The notes beneath the pieces were generated by a model, which was not told the DNA's origin, did no database searches, and worked only from the letters and a program-made list of their open reading frames with translations. A DNA stretch of 64,000 nucleotides from Octopus sinensis (lineage: Eukaryota), in contig NC_042998.1 of the NCBI RefSeq assembly GCF_006345805.1, positions 138,942,001-139,006,000 of the forward strand. The letters run 5' to 3'. Below, one piece after another: positions 4,930-53,234 of this stretch. The position numbers were made by a program, and so were the translations under genes. Positions within the stretch are counted from its first letter, which is position 1. Every line of letters begins with the position of its first letter.

Positions 4930-6000
4930 CCTAAGCTTAAAAAAAACAGCTAAGGGGTGGGTATATAAAAAACAGTTTAGGGTGGTATATAAAAAGAACA
5001 GCTTAGGGTGGTATATAAAAAATGCCGTGGAGCCATTGTTGAAACATACGAAGAAAGCCAGAATCATTAAAACCGAGAATTGTGTAATGAAAGAAAAATT
5101 TAAAGAAGAAATGAACACAAAAAAAGAAACAGTATGGAAGAGAAAAAATGTACGGTCAGTTCGCAAGAGATGTGAACGCCAAGACAGATACAGAGGACCG
5201 GTGGCTATGGATGAGAAGAAGTGACTTGAAGATAGAGACAGAAGCACTCATATGCGCAGCTCATGAACAAGCATTAAGGACCAACTATGTGAAGTGCAGA
5301 ATAGACAACACTACTGACAGCGACAGAAGCAGAATATGTAGTGAGAGGAGTGAAACGGTATGGCACATCGTTAGCGAATGCCCGAAATTGGCACAACAAG
5401 AATAGAAAAGACGCCATGACAATGTGACAAGAATGATCCATTGGGAGCTCTGTTGACATCACGACCTACAAAGAGCAGAGACGTGGTATGAGCAAACCGT
5501 AGGAGTTACTGAGAATGAGAATTGCAAAATCCTGTGGGATGTAATGATCCAGTGCGATCACCTGATCAGATATCGGAAACCGGACATTGTTGTGGTGAAT
5601 AAAAAAGAAAGAATGTACATGATAATCAACATAGCATGACCCGGTGACAACAGGATCGATGAGAAAGAAGAAAAAAATAAACAACTATGATGATTTGAAG
5701 TGGGAAATACGGAGGTTGTGGTCAATGAGGAGAGTAGATGTGATACCAATAGTAACTGGCGCACTTAGAAATATCAGCACTCAACTACCAACATGGCTGA
5801 AAAAGATTGGTGCAAGTGTGAAGGTAGAACACCTACAAAAATCAGCATTCCTTGAAACTACAAAAATTCTTTGTAGGGTTCTTGAAGTACGCCCAGTAAA
5901 CAAGTGTTACCTTAGTCTCCTGGCTGTGGACAGTTGACACTTTCCATCATACACAGCAAAATAAACTGTGAGTTTTCCCCACATAATAATAATAATAATA
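4416..6000 (+). mobile_element. R4/Dong-like non-LTR retrotransposon relic (RT fragment, CCHC finger, restriction-like endonuclease), internally deleted, ending in (AAT)n
   Basis: [71 protein letters not shown] and VIPIVTGAL motifs, with stops and frameshifts. Confidence 0.88.
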
Positions 6001-6004
6001 ACAA

Positions 6005-9000
6005 TTTATTTTATTTGCCACGAGGGCAAAGGATGAGGGGATAAACATAAAGTGTGTGAGGGTTACATATAATGGAATGGTAAAGTAAAAATTATACACG
6101 ATACACATTAGAAGGGAAATATACATAGTATATGACTGGAAAAAGAGGAGAAAAAAGGTTGTGATGGGAACCCCCTGATTCAGGAGGACTTCTAGAGATA
6201 ATCAAGGAACCCTACCATCCAAGATCACCCTGAGTACCAAGGACGAGAGCCCACACCAACTTCTTTCTTCCGACTCACAGGTCTACACTGAGAGTGGTAC
6301 CATCCACTCTTGCCATTTTTGCAACTTTCACCCACCTTTTCATAAATTCACTCAAGGACAGCACCTCCCTCTCTACCCTCACTTTCCTTTTCAAGCAAAA
6401 CTTGAAAAAGTCAATGAGGGCTTTACCAAAAAGGAAAGTTTCTGTCCACATTCCATTCAGCCTCGTTAACCAGATAACCTCTTTCGCCACAGCCACCAAA
6501 CAAAGGAAAACTGCCTTGCCAGCCCAATTAAAGAAGGGCGGCGAGGCAATCATTATAGACTCGAACAACAGACAGGCCATAACTCCACAAGTCAGCAATG
6601 CCCGGACACTGAACGAGTGCATGCAGAACGGTTTCGCTGCTCTGCGAGCACCTCGGACAATCCCATATGACAGCACATCCATGTCTGTAGAGTGTATCGC
6701 AGATCCCGAGCAGTTTCACTGGTCTACCAGTCCAGCGTCCAATGGCATCGATCTGCCTCTCCAGGTGCCCAATCCCAATCCCACCGACTTGTCGGCATTG
6801 ATTTTAGCCCCTGCAACCGACTCATATTCTGTTTAGCAATAGAAAGAAATTAGAAGGAGAACTAGTTAGCAAACTAGAAGAGGCTATTAGTAAAGGCATC
6901 GAAACCGACGTGTTGGCGGCAAGAATGCCCCTTGACCATTTCTTTGAGACAAAACACGAAGGGTGCATTGTCAGAGCAAAGTCTCATGCGCTAAAACGTG
7001 AAGGAACTTAATCCGTCCGATGGGCCTGAACGGTAGAGACGACGTGGAAACAAAACCACGATCAAGTCTTTGACAGATCAGGATGGACGTGTGCTACTCG
7101 GTTCTGAGTAGATGCGTGCGGCTTTCCAGCAGCACTTTGCGCGGCTGTTTGGGGAAGGTTCTCTGACCTAACAAATACTCTATCAAAATACGATCTTGAT
7201 GACCCGCTGTGGTTACTCCATGTCCACACTGGCACATCAGGGAAATCCAGTCAGTACCTCTCAGAAAGCTGGAAAGTCTTGAGCAAGTTTTCGAGGCTTT
7301 TACACCCCCTTCTACTATGTACTAAACCTACACAGTCCTTCCGTGCGTCCAAAATACTATTCCAGTCCCCCACTAGCACTAAAGTGCAAGACGTACCCAA
7401 GAATGCTTCTAGACTCGTAGTCTTTGAAAATAGATACTAGAGCGTGTTTTCCAGAGACCCTTGTTTCACTAATGGCAGCCACGTCCAATGAAGCCAATCG
7501 TCTCCACTTCGGAGGCGTCCGACATCATGACGGTGACGTCGTCCGTGTATGCAGACATTGCCACCCCACCAGTCCAATTTCGAAAGGGAGGCCTCTTAAC
7601 TGTTCGCAGAAGCAGCTCGAGGGTCAGCACATTCAGAAGAGGTGGCAGCGGACAGCCCTGACGGACCGAACGTGAAATACTAAACGGTTCCAATAGGTGA
7701 CCACTTATTTTGACCACGAGCAAGTGCCGCTATGCATTGCAGCAATCCAGCCTCTGAAAACTAGTCCGAAACCGGCCACTTTAAGGACAGCTTCCAAGTA
7801 GCGATGGTCTACCCTACCGAAAGCTTTCGACTTGCCTAAATTGATCAAGGCCCCACCGAAGCCAGCTTTAGTCCCAGCCCTCTCTACGATGTATCACATA
7901 AGGTGGAGATTGCCGTGGATACACCTGATCGGGATTGCGTACGTTTGTACCTCCCTGACCAGACTACCAACAACAAGCGCCAACCTTTTCGCTAACACCT
8001 TGGCCAAAATCTTAAACTCTGTGCCGAAAATTACCTAACACGTCCCCATTGTCAGCGTCCTTTCTCAGCAGTGTTACTACATCCCGGCTGACAGCATTAG
8101 GAATTCTCCCGTTCTGCTGCTAGTTACTGTAGACATCTGCCAAGAGGCTGACAATACACCTTTCATGTTTCGCCTCAAAGAAATGGTCAAGGGCCATTCT
8201 TGCCGCTAACACGTCAGTCATGATGCCTTTAGTAATAGGCTCTTCTAGTTTGCTAATTAGTTCTCCATCAAATATATGGCTATGATGGCTATGATGCTCC
8301 CCCACTACTTCTGCTCGTGATCAGAGATGCACATATCGTCAGCCACTAAGGGACATGCTCAACTGGTTAAGGTCAAACAACTGAAAAGCAAATCTGTGGT
8401 ATTGAGCAGAATATCTCCATCAAATATAACTAGTTTGCTAATCCGGTCTCTGTAGTCTTTGCGAGCCGATAAGAATACATTCGACTCCCAGTAACCGGGC
8501 CCTTGGCCAAGGGTCATATCTAAATCGACTGAGTATATCACAAATTTATGATCTGTGTAGCCGACCAATTTAAATTGTGGACAATCTATGCTATCCCTAT
8601 CCTCCGACCAAACAAATACTCTAAATACGATCTTGATGACCTGCTGTGGTTGCTCCATGTCCACACTGGCACATCGGGGAAATCCAGTCGGTACCTCTCA
8701 GAAAGCTGGTAAGTCCTGAGCAGGTTTTTGAGGCTTTTACACCCCCTTCTACTATGTAAACCCACACAGTCCTTCCGTGCATCCAAAATAATATTCCAAT
8801 CCTCCACTAGTACTAAAGTGCGAGACGTACCTAAGAATGTTTCTAGATGGCTGAAGAAACCTGGCCTTCCAGCCCCTTTTGAGGCATAAACCGCCACTAG
8901 TCTAAAGGTGCCACCTTCACTGCCATTCACGTCCAGTACCACTAACTTACCATCCGGATCCATGAAGATAACTCGTACTTGGAGATCTAAGGATTCCCGG

Positions 9001-11500: not shown

Positions 11501-12415
11501 AAACTGAACTTGCCAGATAAGACAAGGCTTGCAGAAGAAAAACCCTGTGAATGAGGAAGAGATTAGAAGTCATTCTAGATCAGGCAAAAAGAGATGCAAG
11601 GCCTGAGTTCATTCCACAGTGAAAATGTGATTTGGTAGCAAGCTGACTGCCCCTGCATATATATGTACATCTACTCTGAAAGGAACGAGCAATCGTTTGA
11701 TGATGATGAAGCTTTTGCTTTCCAGTGGACAGAAGTTTACCACTAATGTCAGCACTTATACCTCCACCAGGTCAAGTACAAATTCTATGAAGATTTTAAT
11801 ATTGTCATCACCTCATCATCGCTGTATTTACGCCTGTTTGCCCCACTCCAGCCTTCATGATCCACTACCTTTCCTGAAGCTTCTCTATCCACACTTTCAT
11901 TTCTTGGACAAGTTACCATAAGGGTATGTTGTGGTACCTTATCATCACTGTATTTACCTGTTAGAGCCCCACTTCAACCTCCTCCATCCACCCATATAAA
12001 ATATGAATCTCTTCCACAAATATTAATCTATTCCTGCTTTCCCTCAACATACTTTAACTTCTCAAAACCTTGCTTAAAGCAACCACCCTATTGCTTACGT
12101 TCCCTCTTATTTGAGGAGCACTCTGAAGAAGAACCCAATAAACACAGTAAATGGTTGGCATTAGGAAAGGACATCCAGCCATAGAAATCATGCCAAAATT
12201 GTGACACCGGTAGACCAACTATGCTGGAATCCCTGAGCCAAGATAGATGATAAGACAAGGATATAATGAATAAAATGGATGGAGATGGCTGTGGGGAGGA
12301 GGAGGAAAGTTTGAAGGAGAGGTAAGGATAAGAAGGGATAAGATATACATTAAGTAGCTCAACTGACCACAATTGTTAATCAGTTTATAGGAATGTTAAA
12401 AGACTGTTGAATCAC

Positions 12416-16254: not shown

Positions 16255-16386
16255 CTCAAGCTGGTCAACCAATTGCATCTCATATGTCAGCTGTTTGTCA
16301 TGCAGTTCCTCAAGTTTTTTGCGAAATTCAGCCATTTTGCTTTCATACTCTGACATTTCTGTGACAAAGGTGAGGTTCTCAAACGT
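16255..16386 (-). CDS. DRC3: DRC3 coding exon 8 (TFENLTFVTEMSEYESKMAEFRKKLEELHDKQLTYEMQLVDQLE)
   Basis: Acceptor TTTTACAG, donor GAG|GTAATT, 132 nt, phase 0/0. C-terminal motif matches human LMTLEMQLVEQLE. Absent from the ORF track in this frame (no ATG). Confidence 0.92.
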
Positions 16387-20524: not shown

Positions 20525-20699
20525 CTTGTCTTTGTACTCAATGAATTCATTGAAAGCTTTAGTAGACAATTCCTTGTTCTCTGCTTTCGCATCTTCTACA
20601 CATTGCCAAAATGTATCCACTTCATCTTTTATTCTGATGTGTTCCACAGTGCCAAAATTGAAGATTTGATTAGACACAGCTAATATTTTTGATTTGAAA
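20525..20699 (-). CDS. DRC3: DRC3 coding exon 7 (Y-FKSKILAVSNQIFNFGTVEHIRIKDEVDTFWQCVEDAKAENKELSTKAFNEFIEYKDK)
   Basis: Matches human YKDKFVIICVNIFEYGLKQQEKRKTELDTFSECVREAIQENQE. Donor AAG|GTAAGA at 20524. The 5' boundary follows the U12 branch site TTCCTTAAC. Confidence 0.9.
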
Positions 20700-23300
20700 A
20701 TGGAGAAGTTAAGGAAATGTTAACGTGGTCTCACAAATAAAAAAAAACTGGTTTCTATTCCATTATATGTAAACAAACATAAGTTGGCTTTAAAGCGTTG
20801 AAATGTATTGTAGAAGTAGAAAGATATATTTCTCAACGCGTAAATACTGACAGAACAACCTATCTCTATATATATAAAGCTGAAGTTGTCTGTGTATGGC
20901 AGGTTTGGTGGCCTTCAACTAACACTATCTCCTCCAAGACCCTGCAGCACAAGTTGACCAAAATTGAGAGTATGATAGAAGAAGGCTTGCTCTTCCTTCC
21001 GTAGAAGAAAAAATTCAAATTGGACCATGTTAACACCAAAAATTATTTACATCAAAAAGGTGCTCTTTTTCTATAAAAATCCCTATTTTTTACGATTTTT
21101 TTACTGCTGTGTCACCATTTTTCGGTGTATTTCAACCAGAAAAAATGTTCATTTAAAGAGAATAACAAGCTACATAATGCAAAATGTTTTACTTTTCAAA
21201 AATTCCAATTCTAAAGGATCAAAACAAACCCGAGCAACGCCGGGCGATACTGCTAGTATAGGATAAAATGCTTTTAGAGCATGGCTGGTCGCTGACAAAT
21301 TTTTCTGCTCTAAAAGGATTTTATCCTATATATGCTGTTCTATCAGTATTTACATGTTGAAAAATATAGCTTCTATTCATTGTAAATCAAAAATGTGTAG
21401 AAACAATTGAATGTTTTATCTATAAACACATTGACCTTCCAATGAGACTCAGGTAACTATGCATCTGGGGAGGAGATTCCACAAAGGTAGTCATCATCAT
21501 TATCATCATTTAATGTTCCCTTTTCCATGCATGCATGGGTTGGACAGATCTGATCAATTATAATTTTTTTTGCTTACAAATTACAAGTTTATCTTTAGCT
21601 AATCTGTATTTAACCCTTTAGCATTCAGATTACTCTGCCAAATGTAATGCTTATTTATTCACATTGTTTTGAATTAATCATGCATTATCTCATGGCTTTG
21701 AGATTTCAATGATGAGATTGTTTATTTTTAAAATAGAATGATATTGTAGGGTAGGTGCAAGAGGCCAGATCAGGCCAGTTTGAAAATTAAACAGGTAAAA
21801 TATTTGGGCCAGATATACTTTTCTACTCAAAGCACAAGGCCCGAAATTCGTGAGGGAGGATGCCAGTCGATTGTATCGATCCAGTATGCAACTGGTACTT
21901 AATTTATCAACCCCAAAAGGACGAAAGGCAAAGTCAACCTCAGTGGAATTTGAATTCAGAACATAAAGACAGACAAAATACCACTAAGCATTTCACCCAG
22001 CATGCTAACATCTCTGCTAGCTCACCGCCTTTATTTGGGCCAGATATAGTCAGTTTAAATGCTAATCAGAAAACATTGGTATTTATTTAACCAGCAAGCT
22101 GCAGTTTTTTTAATGTCTACTTTTCTATGCTTGGGTGAGTGTATACTGAAGCAGAGATCCTATGACCAGATGCCCTTTCTGTCACCAACTCCCACTTGTT
22201 TCCAACTGGGGTAATAATCTTCCACTCTACTGAACAATCTGGACATGTTGTGTGTAAAGAACTGAAATCAAAGGACTCTGTATGAATGAGCCCTTTGTTT
22301 AAAAAGATCACACAACATGTCAAGAAACCCAAACATGCTTTCATGGTGGACTACAAACAGATGAATACTGACAGGAAGTCATAGTTTACAAACCAGTGAA
22401 AATGAGGATGCTCTGTCACCACCTTCTCATAGTTCAATCCCTTAGCATGATGCCACGCAGCTCACAGTATTAAAGATCCTCTTTGACTGAGTGGAAGTAA
22501 AGTAGAGACAGGGGAGGTTTTACCACATAAAAAGCACCCAATACACTTATTTAAGTGATTGGTGTTCAGAAGGGCATCCAACCAATAGAATCCCTGCCAA
22601 AGCAGACACTGGAATTTGGTACAGTCCTCTGGCTTGCCAGCTCCAGTCAAAATGTCCAAACCATGCCAGTATGTCAAATGAACATTAAATAACGACGATG
22701 ACACCACCGACGCCAAAGATGACAACGACGACGACGACGACCACCACCACCACCACCACCACCATCACCATCATCATCACCATCATCATCATCATCATCA
22801 TCATCATCATTTAATGTATGAAAGAATGGGCCCAAACAGGTTTCTTACAGTAGAACTACATGGGAGTAACCAAGATGGAACTAGAAAGAGAAATGAAATA
22901 TACAGTGAATAAAAGTTGAGTGGGGACGAAAGAACAAGAACTGTAGACAGGTAGGGGTTGTAAGAATGTACAGGGAAAGTGGGGATGAATAGGGGTGATG
23001 GGGTGGATATAATGAATGAAGAAGAAGGGTTTAGAGGTCGTTAACAATAAATATGAGTCAGAGGGAGTGCAGGGAAGAATAGGTGGTGATTGTATAGATT
23101 AGGTGAAAATGGAAAAAAAAGAATGGACTCAGCTTCCTAAAGGCTTGCTTCTACTATGTGATGCTTACTACAAAAATTCCACATTAAAGAATAAATAAGT
23201 TTCGTTTTACCTTTGTACTATGTGATTTACCTATGGATCAATTTGTTAAAATGATATATATAAAAATACATCAAGAGATATATGATAAAGTCATGGATAT
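20700..23300 (-). other. DRC3: U12-type (minor spliceosome) intron, DRC3 intron 6, AT-AT termini, 2601 nt
   Basis: 5' end ATATCCATGA (U12 consensus RTATCCTT). Branch site TTTCCTTAAC at 20717-20708, followed by TTCTCCAT. Joining TA|T restores the frame with no indel relative to human DRC3. Confidence 0.85.
20863..21256 (+). mobile_element. Non-autonomous Helitron inside the U12 intron
   Basis: A|TCTCTATATATATAAAG 5' end; CGAGCAACGCCGGGCGATACTGCTAG|T 3' end, shared with 13846-14241. Confidence 0.8.
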
Positions 23301-23413
23301 TAGATCATTTCATCTGCAATACCAGGCATGTCATTCAGTTTCCTGCCTTCAACATCATCTGCATACAAGCTTATATAAAGAAGATCATCTTTGAAGCTTT
23401 CTACATATGCCTC
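23301..23413 (-). CDS. DRC3: DRC3 coding exon 6 (EAYVESFKDDLLYISLYADDVEGRKLNDMPGIADEMI + TA)
   Basis: Acceptor TTTGCAG. Matches human TAFVEHLNGSFLFDSMYAEDSEGNNLSYLPGVGELLE. No GT donor precedes the in-frame TAA; the exon ends at the U12-type donor ATATCCAT (phase 2). Confidence 0.9.
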
Positions 23414-30897: not shown

Positions 30898-31017
30898 CAT
30901 ATCTTTCTTATATTCTTCTCTCATCAGTCGTTGTTCTTCCTCTTTCTGTTGGATTTTCATCTCAGACTCAACAAGTGCATCAAGAGATGTTTGCATTTTC
31001 CTGAGAGCATTTTCTCG
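30898..31017 (-). CDS. DRC3: DRC3 coding exon 5 (RENALRKMQTSLDALVESEMKIQQKEEEQRLMREEYKKDM), coiled coil
   Basis: Acceptor TTTTTTAG, donor GTAATC, 120 nt, phase 0/0. Position and coiled-coil character fit the human segment preceding TAFVEHL. Confidence 0.85.
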
Positions 31018-33456: not shown

Positions 33457-33603
33457 AAATTCTTCCTTGACTAAGGCATAATCGACATACTCCACCCAGT
33501 TGAGATAAACAACAACTGTCGTTTTATAGTCTTCCATCTCACAGAAGGGATTACCAGCTAAGTTAATCATTTTTAGCTTTTTGAATTTTCGTAGATACAA
33601 GAT
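33457..33603 (-). CDS. DRC3: DRC3 coding exon 4 (ILYLRKFKKLKMINLAGNPFCEMEDYKTTVVVYLNWVEYVDYALVKEEF), last LRR and LRR cap
   Basis: Acceptor TTTTTTCAG, donor GTAAGT, 147 nt, phase 0/0. Matches human IIYLRRFKCLRTLSLSRNPISEAEDYK. Confidence 0.95.
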
Positions 33604-36742: not shown

Positions 36743-36909
36743 CATTCGGAGATCATTAATATCATTATTTCCAAGTGAAAGAACTTCCAAGTCCATTAAA
36801 GTATCCATGTTTGCAATGGTTGATATTCTGTTATTATACAGAGAAAGATCAGTCAATTTTGTTAGGTTATCCAGCCCTTCAATTTCTTCAATATTGTTAA
36901 AGGACAAAT
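36743..36909 (-). CDS. DRC3: DRC3 coding exon 3 ([56 protein letters not shown])
   Basis: Acceptor AAATAG, donor GTGAGT, 167 nt, frame-consistent. LRRs match human [29 protein letters not shown]. Confidence 0.95.
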
Positions 36910-39342: not shown

Positions 39343-39459
39343 CCAGCCACACAAGGTTTATAAGTTGATCCAATCCTTCTATTTTTTCAATGACATTATT
39401 ATCAAGTTGTAGTTTGGTCAGTTTAATGAAGCACCATAAGTTGTCAATCTTCAGAATAT
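39343..39459 (-). CDS. DRC3: DRC3 coding exon 2 (N-ILKIDNLWCFIKLTKLQLDNNVIEKIEGLDQLINLVWL), leucine-rich repeats
   Basis: Acceptor TTTGTCAG, donor GTAAGA, 117 nt. Phase 1 continues exon 1. SDS22-like LRR matching human NILRIDNLWQFENLRKLQLDNNIIEKIEGL. Confidence 0.95.
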
Positions 39460-53074: not shown

Positions 53075-53234
53075 TCTTGAAATCTAATCTGAGATGCAGA
53101 ACATAATCAAAATCAATGCCCTCTTTTTTAACAATTTCTCCAGCCTCATATTTTGGTCCTTGTTCTTCAACTGCTTGAAGTAACATACCTTCCTCAATAA
53201 CTGCTGGTTCAATGGAATCATAGAGGCGGCTCAT
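53075..53234 (-). CDS. DRC3: DRC3/LRRC48 coding exon 1 (MSRLYDSIEPAVIEEGMLLQAVEEQGPKYEAGEIVKKEGIDFDYVLHLRLDFK)
   Basis: Translation matches the DRC3 N-terminus (human MEPRVMDDDMLKLAVGDQGPQEEAGQLAKQEGILFKDVLSLQLDF). Acceptor TTTCTTAG lies 5 nt upstream of the ATG (exon starts at 53239). Donor GTAAGT at 53074, phase 1. Confidence 0.95.

What the first reader, a model, noticed from the sequence alone, without database searches (positions are those of the whole stretch)
20700..23300. Minor-spliceosome intron with rare AT-AT ends in a motile-cilia gene
Seen: exon 6 has no GT donor before an in-frame stop. It is followed by ATATCCATGA, and exon 7 is preceded by TTTCCTTAAC-TTCTCCAT. Splicing 23300 to 20700 gives GIADEMI-Y-FKSKI, colinear with human GVGELLET-YKDKF. 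Known: U12 introns have an RTATCCTT 5' site and a TTCCTTAAC branch close to the 3' end; most are GT-AG or AT-AC, and AT-AT is a rare variant. The +7 position (A instead of T) is also non-consensus, and only 9 nt separate the branch A from the exon. GT-AG gene predictors will truncate or split this gene.
Basis: partly seen in the sequence, partly recalled or inferred. Interest (0 to 1): 0.75.

Follow-up and report, generated by a model that had tools for sequence, protein, structure and literature searches.

The report
AT-AT minor intron in octopus DRC3
Intron 6 of the octopus cilia gene DRC3 is a real minor-spliceosome (U12-type) intron with the rare AT...AT ends; it is the counterpart of a catalogued human AT-AC intron and a documented rare subtype, so it is a tidy example rather than a discovery.

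Summary
On the minus strand, exon 6 (23413-23301) is followed by ATATCCATGA. Exon 7 (20699-20525) is preceded by TTTCCTTAAC-TTCTCCAT. Joining 23301 to 20699 gives ...GIADEMIYFKSKIL..., gap-free against human DRC3.

The gene is DRC3/LRRC48, with exons 1-8 in the window. The other six introns that lie whole in the window are GT-AG.

The same intron position carries a U12-type 5' site in human (AT-AC, listed in a published minor-intron table), pangolin, abalone, liver fluke, chiton, Trichoplax and Argonauta.

The terminal T is not a read error. Independent O. vulgaris and O. bimaculoides assemblies have identical splice motifs.

RefSeq proteins of O. sinensis (100% identical to my spliced model) and O. 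bimaculoides already use this junction. The O. vulgaris annotation instead uses an in-frame cryptic GT-AG pair (23322/20680) that deletes 14 conserved codons.

No octopus RNA reads could be examined, so the exact 3' end rests on reading frame, colinearity, conservation and the RefSeq models.

AT-AT is a known subtype: six human introns, and the second commonest non-canonical minor termini in animals. Verdict: real and correctly interpreted, a new member of a known kind, of low to moderate interest.

The parts
23301..23413 (-). DRC3 exon 6 (113 nt, EAYVESF...PGIADEMI + TA of a split Tyr codon)
   Evidence: It is preceded by TTTTGCAG. It is 100% identical to RefSeq O. sinensis DRC3-like.
23291..23300 (-). 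U12-type A-type 5' splice site ATATCCATGA (consensus RTATCCTT; +7 is A)
   Evidence: Identical in O. vulgaris and O. bimaculoides. Orthologous sites: ATATCCTT in human, pangolin, Haliotis, Solemya, Fasciola and chiton; ATATCCTA in Trichoplax; GTATCCTT in Argonauta.
20700..23300 (-). Intron 6, 2601 nt, AT...AT, phase 2
   Evidence: It contains a (CAT/CAC)n microsatellite at 22740-22810.
20708..20717 (-). U12 branch-point sequence TTTCCTTAAC (branch A at 20709 or 20710)
   Evidence: This is the only TTCCTTAAC in the window. It is conserved in three Octopus species and, as TTTCCTTGAC, in Argonauta, where the surrounding intron cannot be aligned.
20700..20701 (-). 3' terminal dinucleotide AT, 9 nt after branch A 20709
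   Evidence: The homologous position is AC in Haliotis, where the exon starts with the same TTTCAAA.
20525..20699 (-). DRC3 exon 7 (175 nt, (Y)FKSKILAVSNQIF...EYKDK), followed by GTAAGA
23321..23322 (-). Cryptic U2-type GT donor inside exon 6 (CCTG|GTATTG)
   Evidence: It is used by the O. vulgaris annotation CAI9717620.1. It is absent in Argonauta, which has GG here.
20680..20681 (-). Cryptic AG acceptor inside exon 7 (AAAAATATTAG|CTGTG)
53075..53234 (-). DRC3 exon 1 (start codon at 53234)
39343..39459 (-). DRC3 exon 2
36743..36909 (-). DRC3 exon 3
33457..33603 (-). DRC3 exon 4
30898..31017 (-). DRC3 exon 5
16255..16386 (-). DRC3 exon 8 (exons 9-10 lie beyond the window start)

Best explanation
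Intron 6 of the octopus DRC3 gene (window 23300 to 20700, minus strand) is a U12-dependent, minor-spliceosome intron of the A-type with AT-AT termini.

Inferred mechanism, from the established U12 pathway:
- The U11/U12 di-snRNP binds the 5' site ATATCC and the branch sequence TTTCCTTAAC together.
- A branch adenosine (20709 or 20710) attacks the 5' site.
- The minor spliceosome does not scan for an AG. It takes the first usable 'A-N' about 9-10 nt downstream, here A20701-T20700.
- Exon 6 (...ATC TA) is joined to exon 7 (T TTC AAA...), which restores a Tyr codon and the frame.

The intron descends from an ancient metazoan AT-AC intron. In the octopod lineage the last base changed from C to T. 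Every other nearby A-N acceptor gives a stop codon or a large deletion, so AT-AT is the only productive choice.

What is shown: the motifs, orthology, conservation, reading-frame logic and agreement with RefSeq models. What is inferred: actual use of the junction in octopus RNA, and dependence on U11/U12/U4atac/U6atac.
For: - Motifs sit at the exact exon edges and are far beyond chance.
- The gap-free alignment of the joined exons to human DRC3 runs through the junction. More than 100 full-length orthologues keep the same 25-residue spacing PG...F.(F/Y)G.
- The human orthologous intron is a listed AT-AC U12 intron with BPS TTCCTTAAC.
- The same codon position and phase carry a U12 5' site elsewhere: pangolin AT-AC, Fasciola AT-AC, Haliotis AT-AC, Liolophura AT-AA, Trichoplax AT-AA, Solemya ATATCCTTTG, Argonauta GTATCCTTTT.
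- Haliotis reads TTCCTTAAC-ACGTTAC|TTTCAAAGAG. Octopus reads TTCCTTAAC-TTCTCCAT|TTTCAAATCA. The exon start is the same, with C in one and T in the other.
- O. vulgaris and O. bimaculoides assemblies have identical 5' site, BPS and CCAT|TTTC. Non-coding DNA between the window and O. bimaculoides is about 91% identical.
- RefSeq O. sinensis XP_029658548.1 is 100% identical over 100% of my 377-residue spliced model. O. bimaculoides XP_014770374.1 has ...EEMVYFKAKIL....
- Enumerating all boundaries leaves 23300/20700 as the only colinear solution from the ATATCC donor.
- The 14 codons flanking the intron show 3 synonymous and 4 mostly conservative changes against Argonauta, while the adjoining intron cannot be aligned. 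They are therefore coding.
- There are precedents. AT-AT makes up 6 human and 6 mouse U12 introns, with AC/AT switches between the two species. Human ERCC5 and SMC3 are AT_AT, SUDS3 has ATATCCAT, and ATG9A and SUDS3 have the same 8-nt spacer after TTAAC.
Against: - No octopus cDNA or RNA-seq junction was seen here. RefSeq models are predictions whose supporting evidence I could not inspect.
- The 5' site has A at +7. In the human table, ATATCCT occurs 196 times against one real ATATCCA 5' site.
- The branch-to-3' distance of 9-10 nt is at the short end.
- From my own memory of Dietrich et al. 2001 (not retrieved here), a terminal U was the least active 3' nucleotide.
- The O. vulgaris annotation prefers a GT-AG alternative.
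- The Argonauta annotation places the acceptor 3 nt upstream, at ..GAC|.
Confidence: 0.85

Rival explanations
1. The main mRNA uses the cryptic U2-type GT-AG pair (donor 23322, acceptor 20680). This removes the 14 codons GIADEMIYFKSKIL, as in the O. vulgaris annotation. The U12-like motifs would then be relics.
For: The pair is in frame and stop-free. It is conserved in O. bimaculoides. It is the model deposited for O. vulgaris, CAI9717620.1. Activation of cryptic major sites around A-type minor introns is documented in human cells.
Against: - The donor is weak (CTG|GTATTG, no G at +5). The acceptor follows a purine-rich stretch (CAAATCAAAAATATTAG).
- The GT is GG in Argonauta.
- The 14 codons are under protein-level constraint and are present in every well-annotated orthologue and in cephalopod cDNA contigs.
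- The O. vulgaris pipeline was EVM/PASA/Augustus/GeneMark. To my knowledge these accept essentially only canonical sites, so the model is the expected artefact rather than RNA evidence.
- Two independent RefSeq runs chose AT-AT.
Confidence: 0.07
2. It is an ordinary AT-AC intron and the terminal T is a sequencing or assembly error, or a rare allele.
For: AC is the state in human, pangolin, Haliotis and Fasciola.
Against: CCAT|TTTC is identical in the window, in an independent O. vulgaris assembly (about 98.4% identical overall, so not the same assembly) and in O. bimaculoides. Argonauta also has CCAT|TTTC.
Confidence: 0.01
3. The U12 5' site is used but the 3' cut is elsewhere. One option is after TT at 20697, giving ...MIYKSKIL, one residue shorter. 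Another is 3 nt upstream, giving Y-I-F as annotated in Argonauta.
For: YKSKI resembles the human YKDKF. A cut at 20697 would give the textbook 12-nt spacing. The Argonauta protein GAB1602487.1 has the extra residue.
Against: - Those sites end in TT or TC, with no A next to last. By my recollection of Dietrich et al. 2001, that A is essential.
- They break the 25-residue colinearity.
- Both Octopus RefSeq models disagree.
- Haliotis and Octopus share the exon start TTTCAAA.
Confidence: 0.04
4. The locus is a decaying pseudogene, and the degenerate splice signals reflect loss of function.
For: Three signals are suboptimal: +7 A, the short spacer and the terminal T.
Against: All eight exons in the window are open, and the other six introns that lie whole in the window have clean GT-AG ends. 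The full 521-residue protein is conserved among three Octopus species, mostly with conservative changes.
Confidence: 0.02

Closest known systems
Human DRC3 (LRRC48) U12-type AT-AC intron, chr17:17995112-17997459
   Same: Same gene, same codon position and phase (after two bases of the codon before the conserved Y/F-K-x-K-F). Same A-type 5' site ATATCC and same branch sequence TTCCTTAAC.
   Different: The human intron ends in AC, has T at +7 (ATATCCTTC) and has a 10-nt spacer after TTAAC. The octopus intron ends in AT, has A at +7 and has an 8-nt spacer.
Documented AT-AT U12-type introns (e.g. human ERCC5, IK, SMC3; mouse Gpaa1, Slc9a8)
   Same: An A-type U12 5' site and branch sequence with a terminal AT. 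Orthologues in other species are AT-AC, so this is a single C/T switch. ERCC5 reads AGTCTTAAC-TGCATGCAT|.
   Different: Different genes. The octopus case adds a non-consensus +7 A. It is fixed across a genus and probably across octopods.
AT-AA versions of this same DRC3 intron (chiton Liolophura sinensis, Trichoplax sp. H2)
   Same: Orthologous intron, ATATCC 5' site, CCTTAAC/T branch sequence, and a non-C last base.
   Different: The last base is A, not T.
Argonauta hians DRC3 intron 6
   Same: Orthologous intron with the same CCAT|TTTC at the 3' end and the same TTTCCTT-R-AC branch sequence.
   Different: The 5' site is G-type (GTATCCTTTT), making it GT-AT, or GT-AC as annotated. The AG 6 nt downstream would create a stop.

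Membership tests
U12-type (minor spliceosome) intron | 5' splice site matching /RTATCCTT | tested here: met
   ATATCCAT matches positions +1 to +6 and +8. Position +7 is A instead of T. Human SUDS3 is a listed minor intron with the same ATATCCAT.
U12-type (minor spliceosome) intron | Branch-point sequence TTCCTTRAY close to the 3' end (about 8-20 nt), with no polypyrimidine tract needed | tested here: met
   There is a perfect TTCCTTAAC, the only copy in the window. Branch A 20709 lies 9 nt from the last intron base. The same 8-nt spacer occurs in human ATG9A and SUDS3.
U12-type (minor spliceosome) intron | Orthologous intron is U12-type in other lineages (class and position are conserved) | tested here: met
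   Human (published table), pangolin, Fasciola, Haliotis, Liolophura, Trichoplax, Solemya and Argonauta.
U12-type (minor spliceosome) intron | Removal depends on U11, U12, U4atac and U6atac snRNPs | not testable with these tools
   This needs snRNA knock-down or in vitro splicing. O. sinensis was included in a published pan-eukaryotic minor-intron comparison, and molluscs are reported as relatively rich in minor introns.
AT-AT subtype of U12 introns | First two intron bases are AT | tested here: met
   The ATATCC site at 23300 is the only U12-type donor. It is identical in three Octopus assemblies.
AT-AT subtype of U12 introns | Last two intron bases are AT, as defined by the mRNA junction | tested here: inconclusive
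   This is the only colinear stop-free solution. It is encoded in two RefSeq proteins and conserved. No transcript reads were available here.
DRC3 / LRRC48 (nexin-dynein regulatory complex subunit 3) | N-terminal LRR domain plus a C-terminal helical region, orthologous to human DRC3 | tested here: met
   PDB 8j07 chain 3 and 9fqr chain Qv hits. Hundreds of named DRC3 orthologues at E down to 1e-239, with LRR_4/LRR_8/LRR_9 Pfam domains.

The most novel reading that the evidence does not exclude
The 3'-terminal T may have been fixed in this U12 intron since before Argonauta and Octopus diverged, while the first base switched between A (Octopus, AT-AT) and G (Argonauta, GT-AT). That would be a natural, long-lived demonstration that the first-last nucleotide pairing seen in AT-AC and GT-AG introns is not required in vivo. 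With its weak +7 and short spacer, the intron might also be a slow-splicing, retention-prone control point for a ciliary gene.
Probability: 0.35. Interest if true: 0.4.

Novelty: new member of a known kind. Interest (0 to 1): 0.25.

Why it matters
The main value is for annotation and as a teaching example.

- This one ancient intron corrupts DRC3 gene models across animals. Models are truncated in Trichoplax, liver flukes, fish, frog and pangolin. Bird models carry a false 'YPSW' insertion. Oyster, clam, sea-slug and O. vulgaris models have in-frame deletions. Pipelines that accept only canonical splice sites will keep getting it wrong.
- It gives a clean evolutionary series of one orthologous minor intron with AC, AA and AT last bases, and an A/G switch at the first base within octopods.
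- It does not change what is known about minor splicing. AT-AT termini, AC/AT switching, +7 variation and 9-nt spacing are all documented.

Tried and rejected
- The first protein search, with the 96-residue exon 6+7 peptide, found nothing. The second returned only proteins of 345 residues or fewer. The hit lists looked capped near 1.75 times the query length, and a 377-residue query then recovered the full-length proteins.
- Pfam has no model for the exon 6-7 region.
- Full-text searches for DRC3 + U12, LRRC48 + minor intron, and minor intron + cephalopod gave nothing. The human intron class came from a supplementary table instead.
- I tested ATATCCTT at 12257-12264 (minus strand) as a possible second U12 donor matching the second human DRC3 U12 intron. 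No open reading frame precedes it.
- Exons 9-10 are not in the window. In O. vulgaris, introns 8 and 9 are plain GT-AG.
- The Solemya velum locus L002 has ATATCCTTTG and TTGCTTTAAC-AAGATTAC. However, exon 7 homology is spread over two or three frames there, from assembly indels or a decayed duplicate, so its 3' end could not be fixed.
- The Batillaria locus L003 holds intron-poor tandem paralogues without this intron, so it says nothing about the splice sites.
- AT-AG use of the AG at 20680 from the U12 donor is rejected. It is 29 nt from the branch point and gives TAC TGT GTC TAA.
- No octopus transcript contigs were found in the protein collection, so there is no direct RNA test.
Full report
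**Observation.** On the minus strand the window reads ...CCT GGT ATT GCA GAT GAA ATG ATC TA|ATATCCATGACTTT... at 23301|23300. It reads ...ACATTTCCTTAACTTCTCCAT|TTTCAAATCAAAAATATTAGCTGTG... at 20700|20699. Joining exon 6 (23413-23301) to exon 7 (20699-20525) gives an open 96-residue peptide, EAYVESF...PGIADEMIYFKSKILAVSNQIF...EYKDK.

The motifs are not chance. TTCCTTAAC occurs once in both strands of the 64 kb window (0.74 expected), and that single copy ends 8 nt before exon 7. RTATCCWT occurs 11 times (12.4 expected), with one copy exactly at the end of exon 6 homology.

**The gene.** The joined peptide hits human DRC3 in the axoneme structure 8j07 (chain 3, E 1.5e-12) and another DRC3 chain in 9fqr (E 2.6e-14). 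The alignment runs through the junction without a gap: PGIADEMIYFKSKILAVSNQIF against PGVGELLETYKDKFVIICVNIF. I located exons 1-5 and 8 by homology and splice signals:

| Exon | Window coordinates (minus strand) |
|---|---|
| 1 | 53234-53075 |
| 2 | 39459-39343 |
| 3 | 36909-36743 |
| 4 | 33603-33457 |
| 5 | 31017-30898 |
| 8 | 16386-16255 |

The other six introns that lie whole in the window begin with GTAAG, GTGAG or GTAAT and end with YAG. Only intron 6 does not. Exons 9-10 lie outside the window.

The 377-residue spliced product is 100% identical over its full length to RefSeq XP_029658548.1, 'dynein regulatory complex subunit 3-like [Octopus sinensis]'. The window is about 98.4% identical to the O. 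vulgaris locus and about 91% identical to O. bimaculoides in alignable DNA. It therefore comes from O. sinensis or a very close relative.

**Is it a U12 intron?** Three lines of evidence say yes.

1. The motifs. ATATCC is at the 5' end. A perfect branch sequence lies 9-10 nt from the 3' end, with no polypyrimidine tract between them.
2. Orthology. A published table of human minor introns lists DRC3 chr17:17995112-17997459 as AT_AC, with GAGAC|ATATCCTTCTGAG and GGGCTTCCTTAACAGCCACTCAC|CTACAA. That is the junction ...LLET|YKDKF, at the same codon and phase.
3. Comparative genomics. I fetched the orthologous genomic locus from other animals:

| Species | 5' site | 3' end | Termini |
|---|---|---|---|
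| Pangolin | AC\|ATATCCTTCC | CTTCCTTAATAGCCACTCAC\|C TAC AAG | AT-AC |
| Fasciola | CA\|ATATCCTTTT | AC end 19 nt after the branch A | AT-AC |
| Haliotis | GT\|ATATCCTTTT | TTCCTTAACACGTTAC\|T TTC AAA GAG | AT-AC |
| Chiton Liolophura | AG\|ATATCCTTTG | CCTTAACAGGGGTTAA\|T TAT AAG | AT-AA |
| Trichoplax | GG\|ATATCCTAAC | ATTCCTTAATTTATCATAA\|T TAT AAA | AT-AA |
| Solemya | AC\|ATATCCTTTG | unresolved | - |
| Unknown organism (Logan RNA contig) | CA\|ATATCCTCAC | intron retained | - |

The intron is therefore an ancient metazoan A-type U12 intron whose last base varies among lineages.

**Is the 3' end really AT?** Several results support it.

- I enumerated every donor and acceptor combination within about 40-60 nt that keeps an open frame. 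From the only U12-type donor (23300), four acceptors have an A next to last and give no stop codon:
  - 20709 lies inside the branch sequence itself.
  - 20700 gives the colinear 96-residue product.
  - 20670 and 20664 lie 39-45 nt from the branch point and delete 10-12 residues.
- The nearer A-N sites at 20694, 20693 and 20692, and the AG at 20680, give stop codons when paired with this donor.
- More than 100 full-length orthologues keep exactly 25 residues from PG to F.(F/Y)G. Only 20700 reproduces that spacing.
- Haliotis and Octopus share the exon start TTTCAAA directly after AC and AT respectively. This pins the homologous cut site and identifies a C/T difference.
- The T is not an error. 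O. vulgaris (a different assembly) and O. bimaculoides have identical TA|ATATCCATGACTTT and TTTCCTTAACTTCTCCAT|TTTCAAA.
- Argonauta also has CCAT|TTTC after TTTCCTTGAC, in an intron that is otherwise unalignable.
- The RefSeq proteins of O. sinensis (...DEMIYFKSKIL...) and O. bimaculoides (...EEMVYFKAKIL...) encode this junction.
- RNA-derived contigs from other cephalopods keep the segment (...ELAGFKEKL......EVYNFKEKL...).

**The rival.** Exon 6 contains CCTG|GTATTG (first intron base 23322) and exon 7 contains ATATTAG|CTGTG (last intron base 20680). Together they form an in-frame GT-AG intron that deletes GIADEMIYFKSKIL. The deposited O. vulgaris protein CAI9717620.1 has exactly this deletion (...KLNDMP|AVSNQIF...).

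That annotation was built with EVidenceModeler, PASA, Augustus and GeneMark.

Several points count against the rival as the real main isoform.

- Both sites are weak.
- The GT is GG in Argonauta.
- Between Octopus and Argonauta, the 14 codons show three synonymous and four mostly conservative changes, next to unalignable intron. They evolve as coding sequence.

It may still exist as a minor cryptic isoform. Activation of major sites around A-type minor introns is documented in human cells.

**Are the 'odd' features exceptional?** No.

- AT-AT accounts for 6 human and 6 mouse U12 introns, and several are AT-AC in the other species (Sheth et al. 2006).
- It is the second commonest non-canonical minor-intron terminus in animals, and O. 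sinensis was among the species surveyed (Larue and Roy 2023).
- In the human table, ERCC5 and SMC3 are AT_AT.
- ATATCCT outnumbers ATATCCA by 196 to 1 at real 5' sites. Even so, SUDS3 (CCAG|ATATCCATTT) is a listed minor intron.
- ATG9A and SUDS3 have the same 8-nt spacer after TTAAC.
- By my own recollection (not retrieved here), Dietrich et al. 2001 found three things. The A next to last is essential. Any last base works, with U the weakest. Spacings under 10 nt are disfavoured. If so, this intron is probably a relatively inefficient substrate. That is an inference.

**Mechanism.** Shown here: the anatomy, the orthology, the conservation, and the fact that AT-AT is the only productive choice. 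Inferred from the established U12 pathway:

- U11/U12 recognise ATATCC and TTTCCTTAAC cooperatively.
- The branch forms at A20709 or A20710.
- The 3' site is chosen by distance rather than by scanning.
- The join restores TA|T.

Because it is an A-type intron, it falls in the class that depends on CENATAC in human cells and has higher basal retention.

**Verdict.** The claim that predictors will fail is partly right. RefSeq succeeded, the O. vulgaris model lost 14 codons, and many other species show truncations or read-through 'x-Y-P' artefacts at this point.

Novelty is low. This is a new member of a documented rare subtype, already implicit in RefSeq. The most interesting residue is comparative: one orthologous intron shows AC, AA and AT last bases, and the first base switches between A and G within octopods.

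Noticed in passing
Related proteins P0004, P0010-P0014, P0023, P0026, P0034-P0064, P0146, P0164, P0174-P0176, P0180, P0207, P0227, P0230: Deposited DRC3 models from many animals are damaged exactly at this U12 intron. Some are truncated with read-through 'x-Y-P...' (= RTATCC): Trichoplax, flukes, several fish, a frog and pangolin. Bird models carry a false 'AYPSW' in place of 'AY(K/R)xx'. Pinctada, Mactra, Nucella, Plakobranchus and Trichoplax adhaerens models have in-frame deletions.
   Followed up: partly
L009:9820-10320 (Argonauta hians): The orthologous intron has a G-type U12 5' site (TA|GTATCCTTTT) but keeps ...TTTCCTTGACGTTTGACCAT|TTTCAG. The AG 6 nt further on would create a TAA stop. 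It must therefore be GT-AT, or GT-AC as annotated, which makes the protein one residue longer. Either way the first base has switched between A and G within octopods.
   Followed up: partly
L010:43000-75560 (O. vulgaris), beyond the window start: Human DRC3 has a second AT-AC U12 intron (chr17:18006254-18007023). The octopus gene has only nine introns, and introns 8 and 9 are ordinary GT-AG (GTAATT...TTTAAG, GTATGA...TTACAG). The second human U12 intron therefore has no U12 counterpart in octopus.
   Followed up: partly
L003:6800-16000 (Batillaria attramentaria): There are three tandem DRC3-like paralogues. Each has a single intron near the exon 5/6 boundary and none at the U12 position. They look like duplicated, retrogene-like copies that have shed the minor intron.
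   Followed up: no
L002:19930-20130 (Solemya velum) and protein P0224: Exon 7 homology is split over two or three reading frames in this copy. A second annotated Solemya DRC3 lies on another chromosome-scale contig. This suggests a decayed duplicate or assembly indels.
   Followed up: no
window:22740-22810: A compound trinucleotide microsatellite lies inside intron 6. It reads (ACC)n/(CAT)n on the plus strand, which is GATGAT...GGTGGT...CGTCGT on the gene strand.
   Followed up: no
window:4600-9100: Retrotransposon debris lies in DRC3 intron 8. ORF fragments give weak, below-cutoff matches to reverse transcriptase (RVT_1, 7472-7729 minus strand, E 4.5e-6) and zf-RVT (5115-5402 plus strand, E 4.6e-4).
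   Followed up: partly
P0122 versus P0121 (O. bimaculoides XP_014770374.1): The O. bimaculoides RefSeq protein (472 aa) lacks the 49 residues of exon 4 (ILYLRKF...VKEEF). The cause could be exon skipping, a gap or an annotation omission. It is unrelated to the U12 intron.
   Followed up: no
window:23286-23300 versus L009 (alignment A2): Against Argonauta GTATC-----CTTTTT, the Octopus 5' site aligns as ATATC[CATGA]CTTTAT. The non-consensus +7 A could therefore stem from a 5-nt insertion into an ancestral RTATCCTTT. This rests on a single four-sequence alignment.
   Followed up: no
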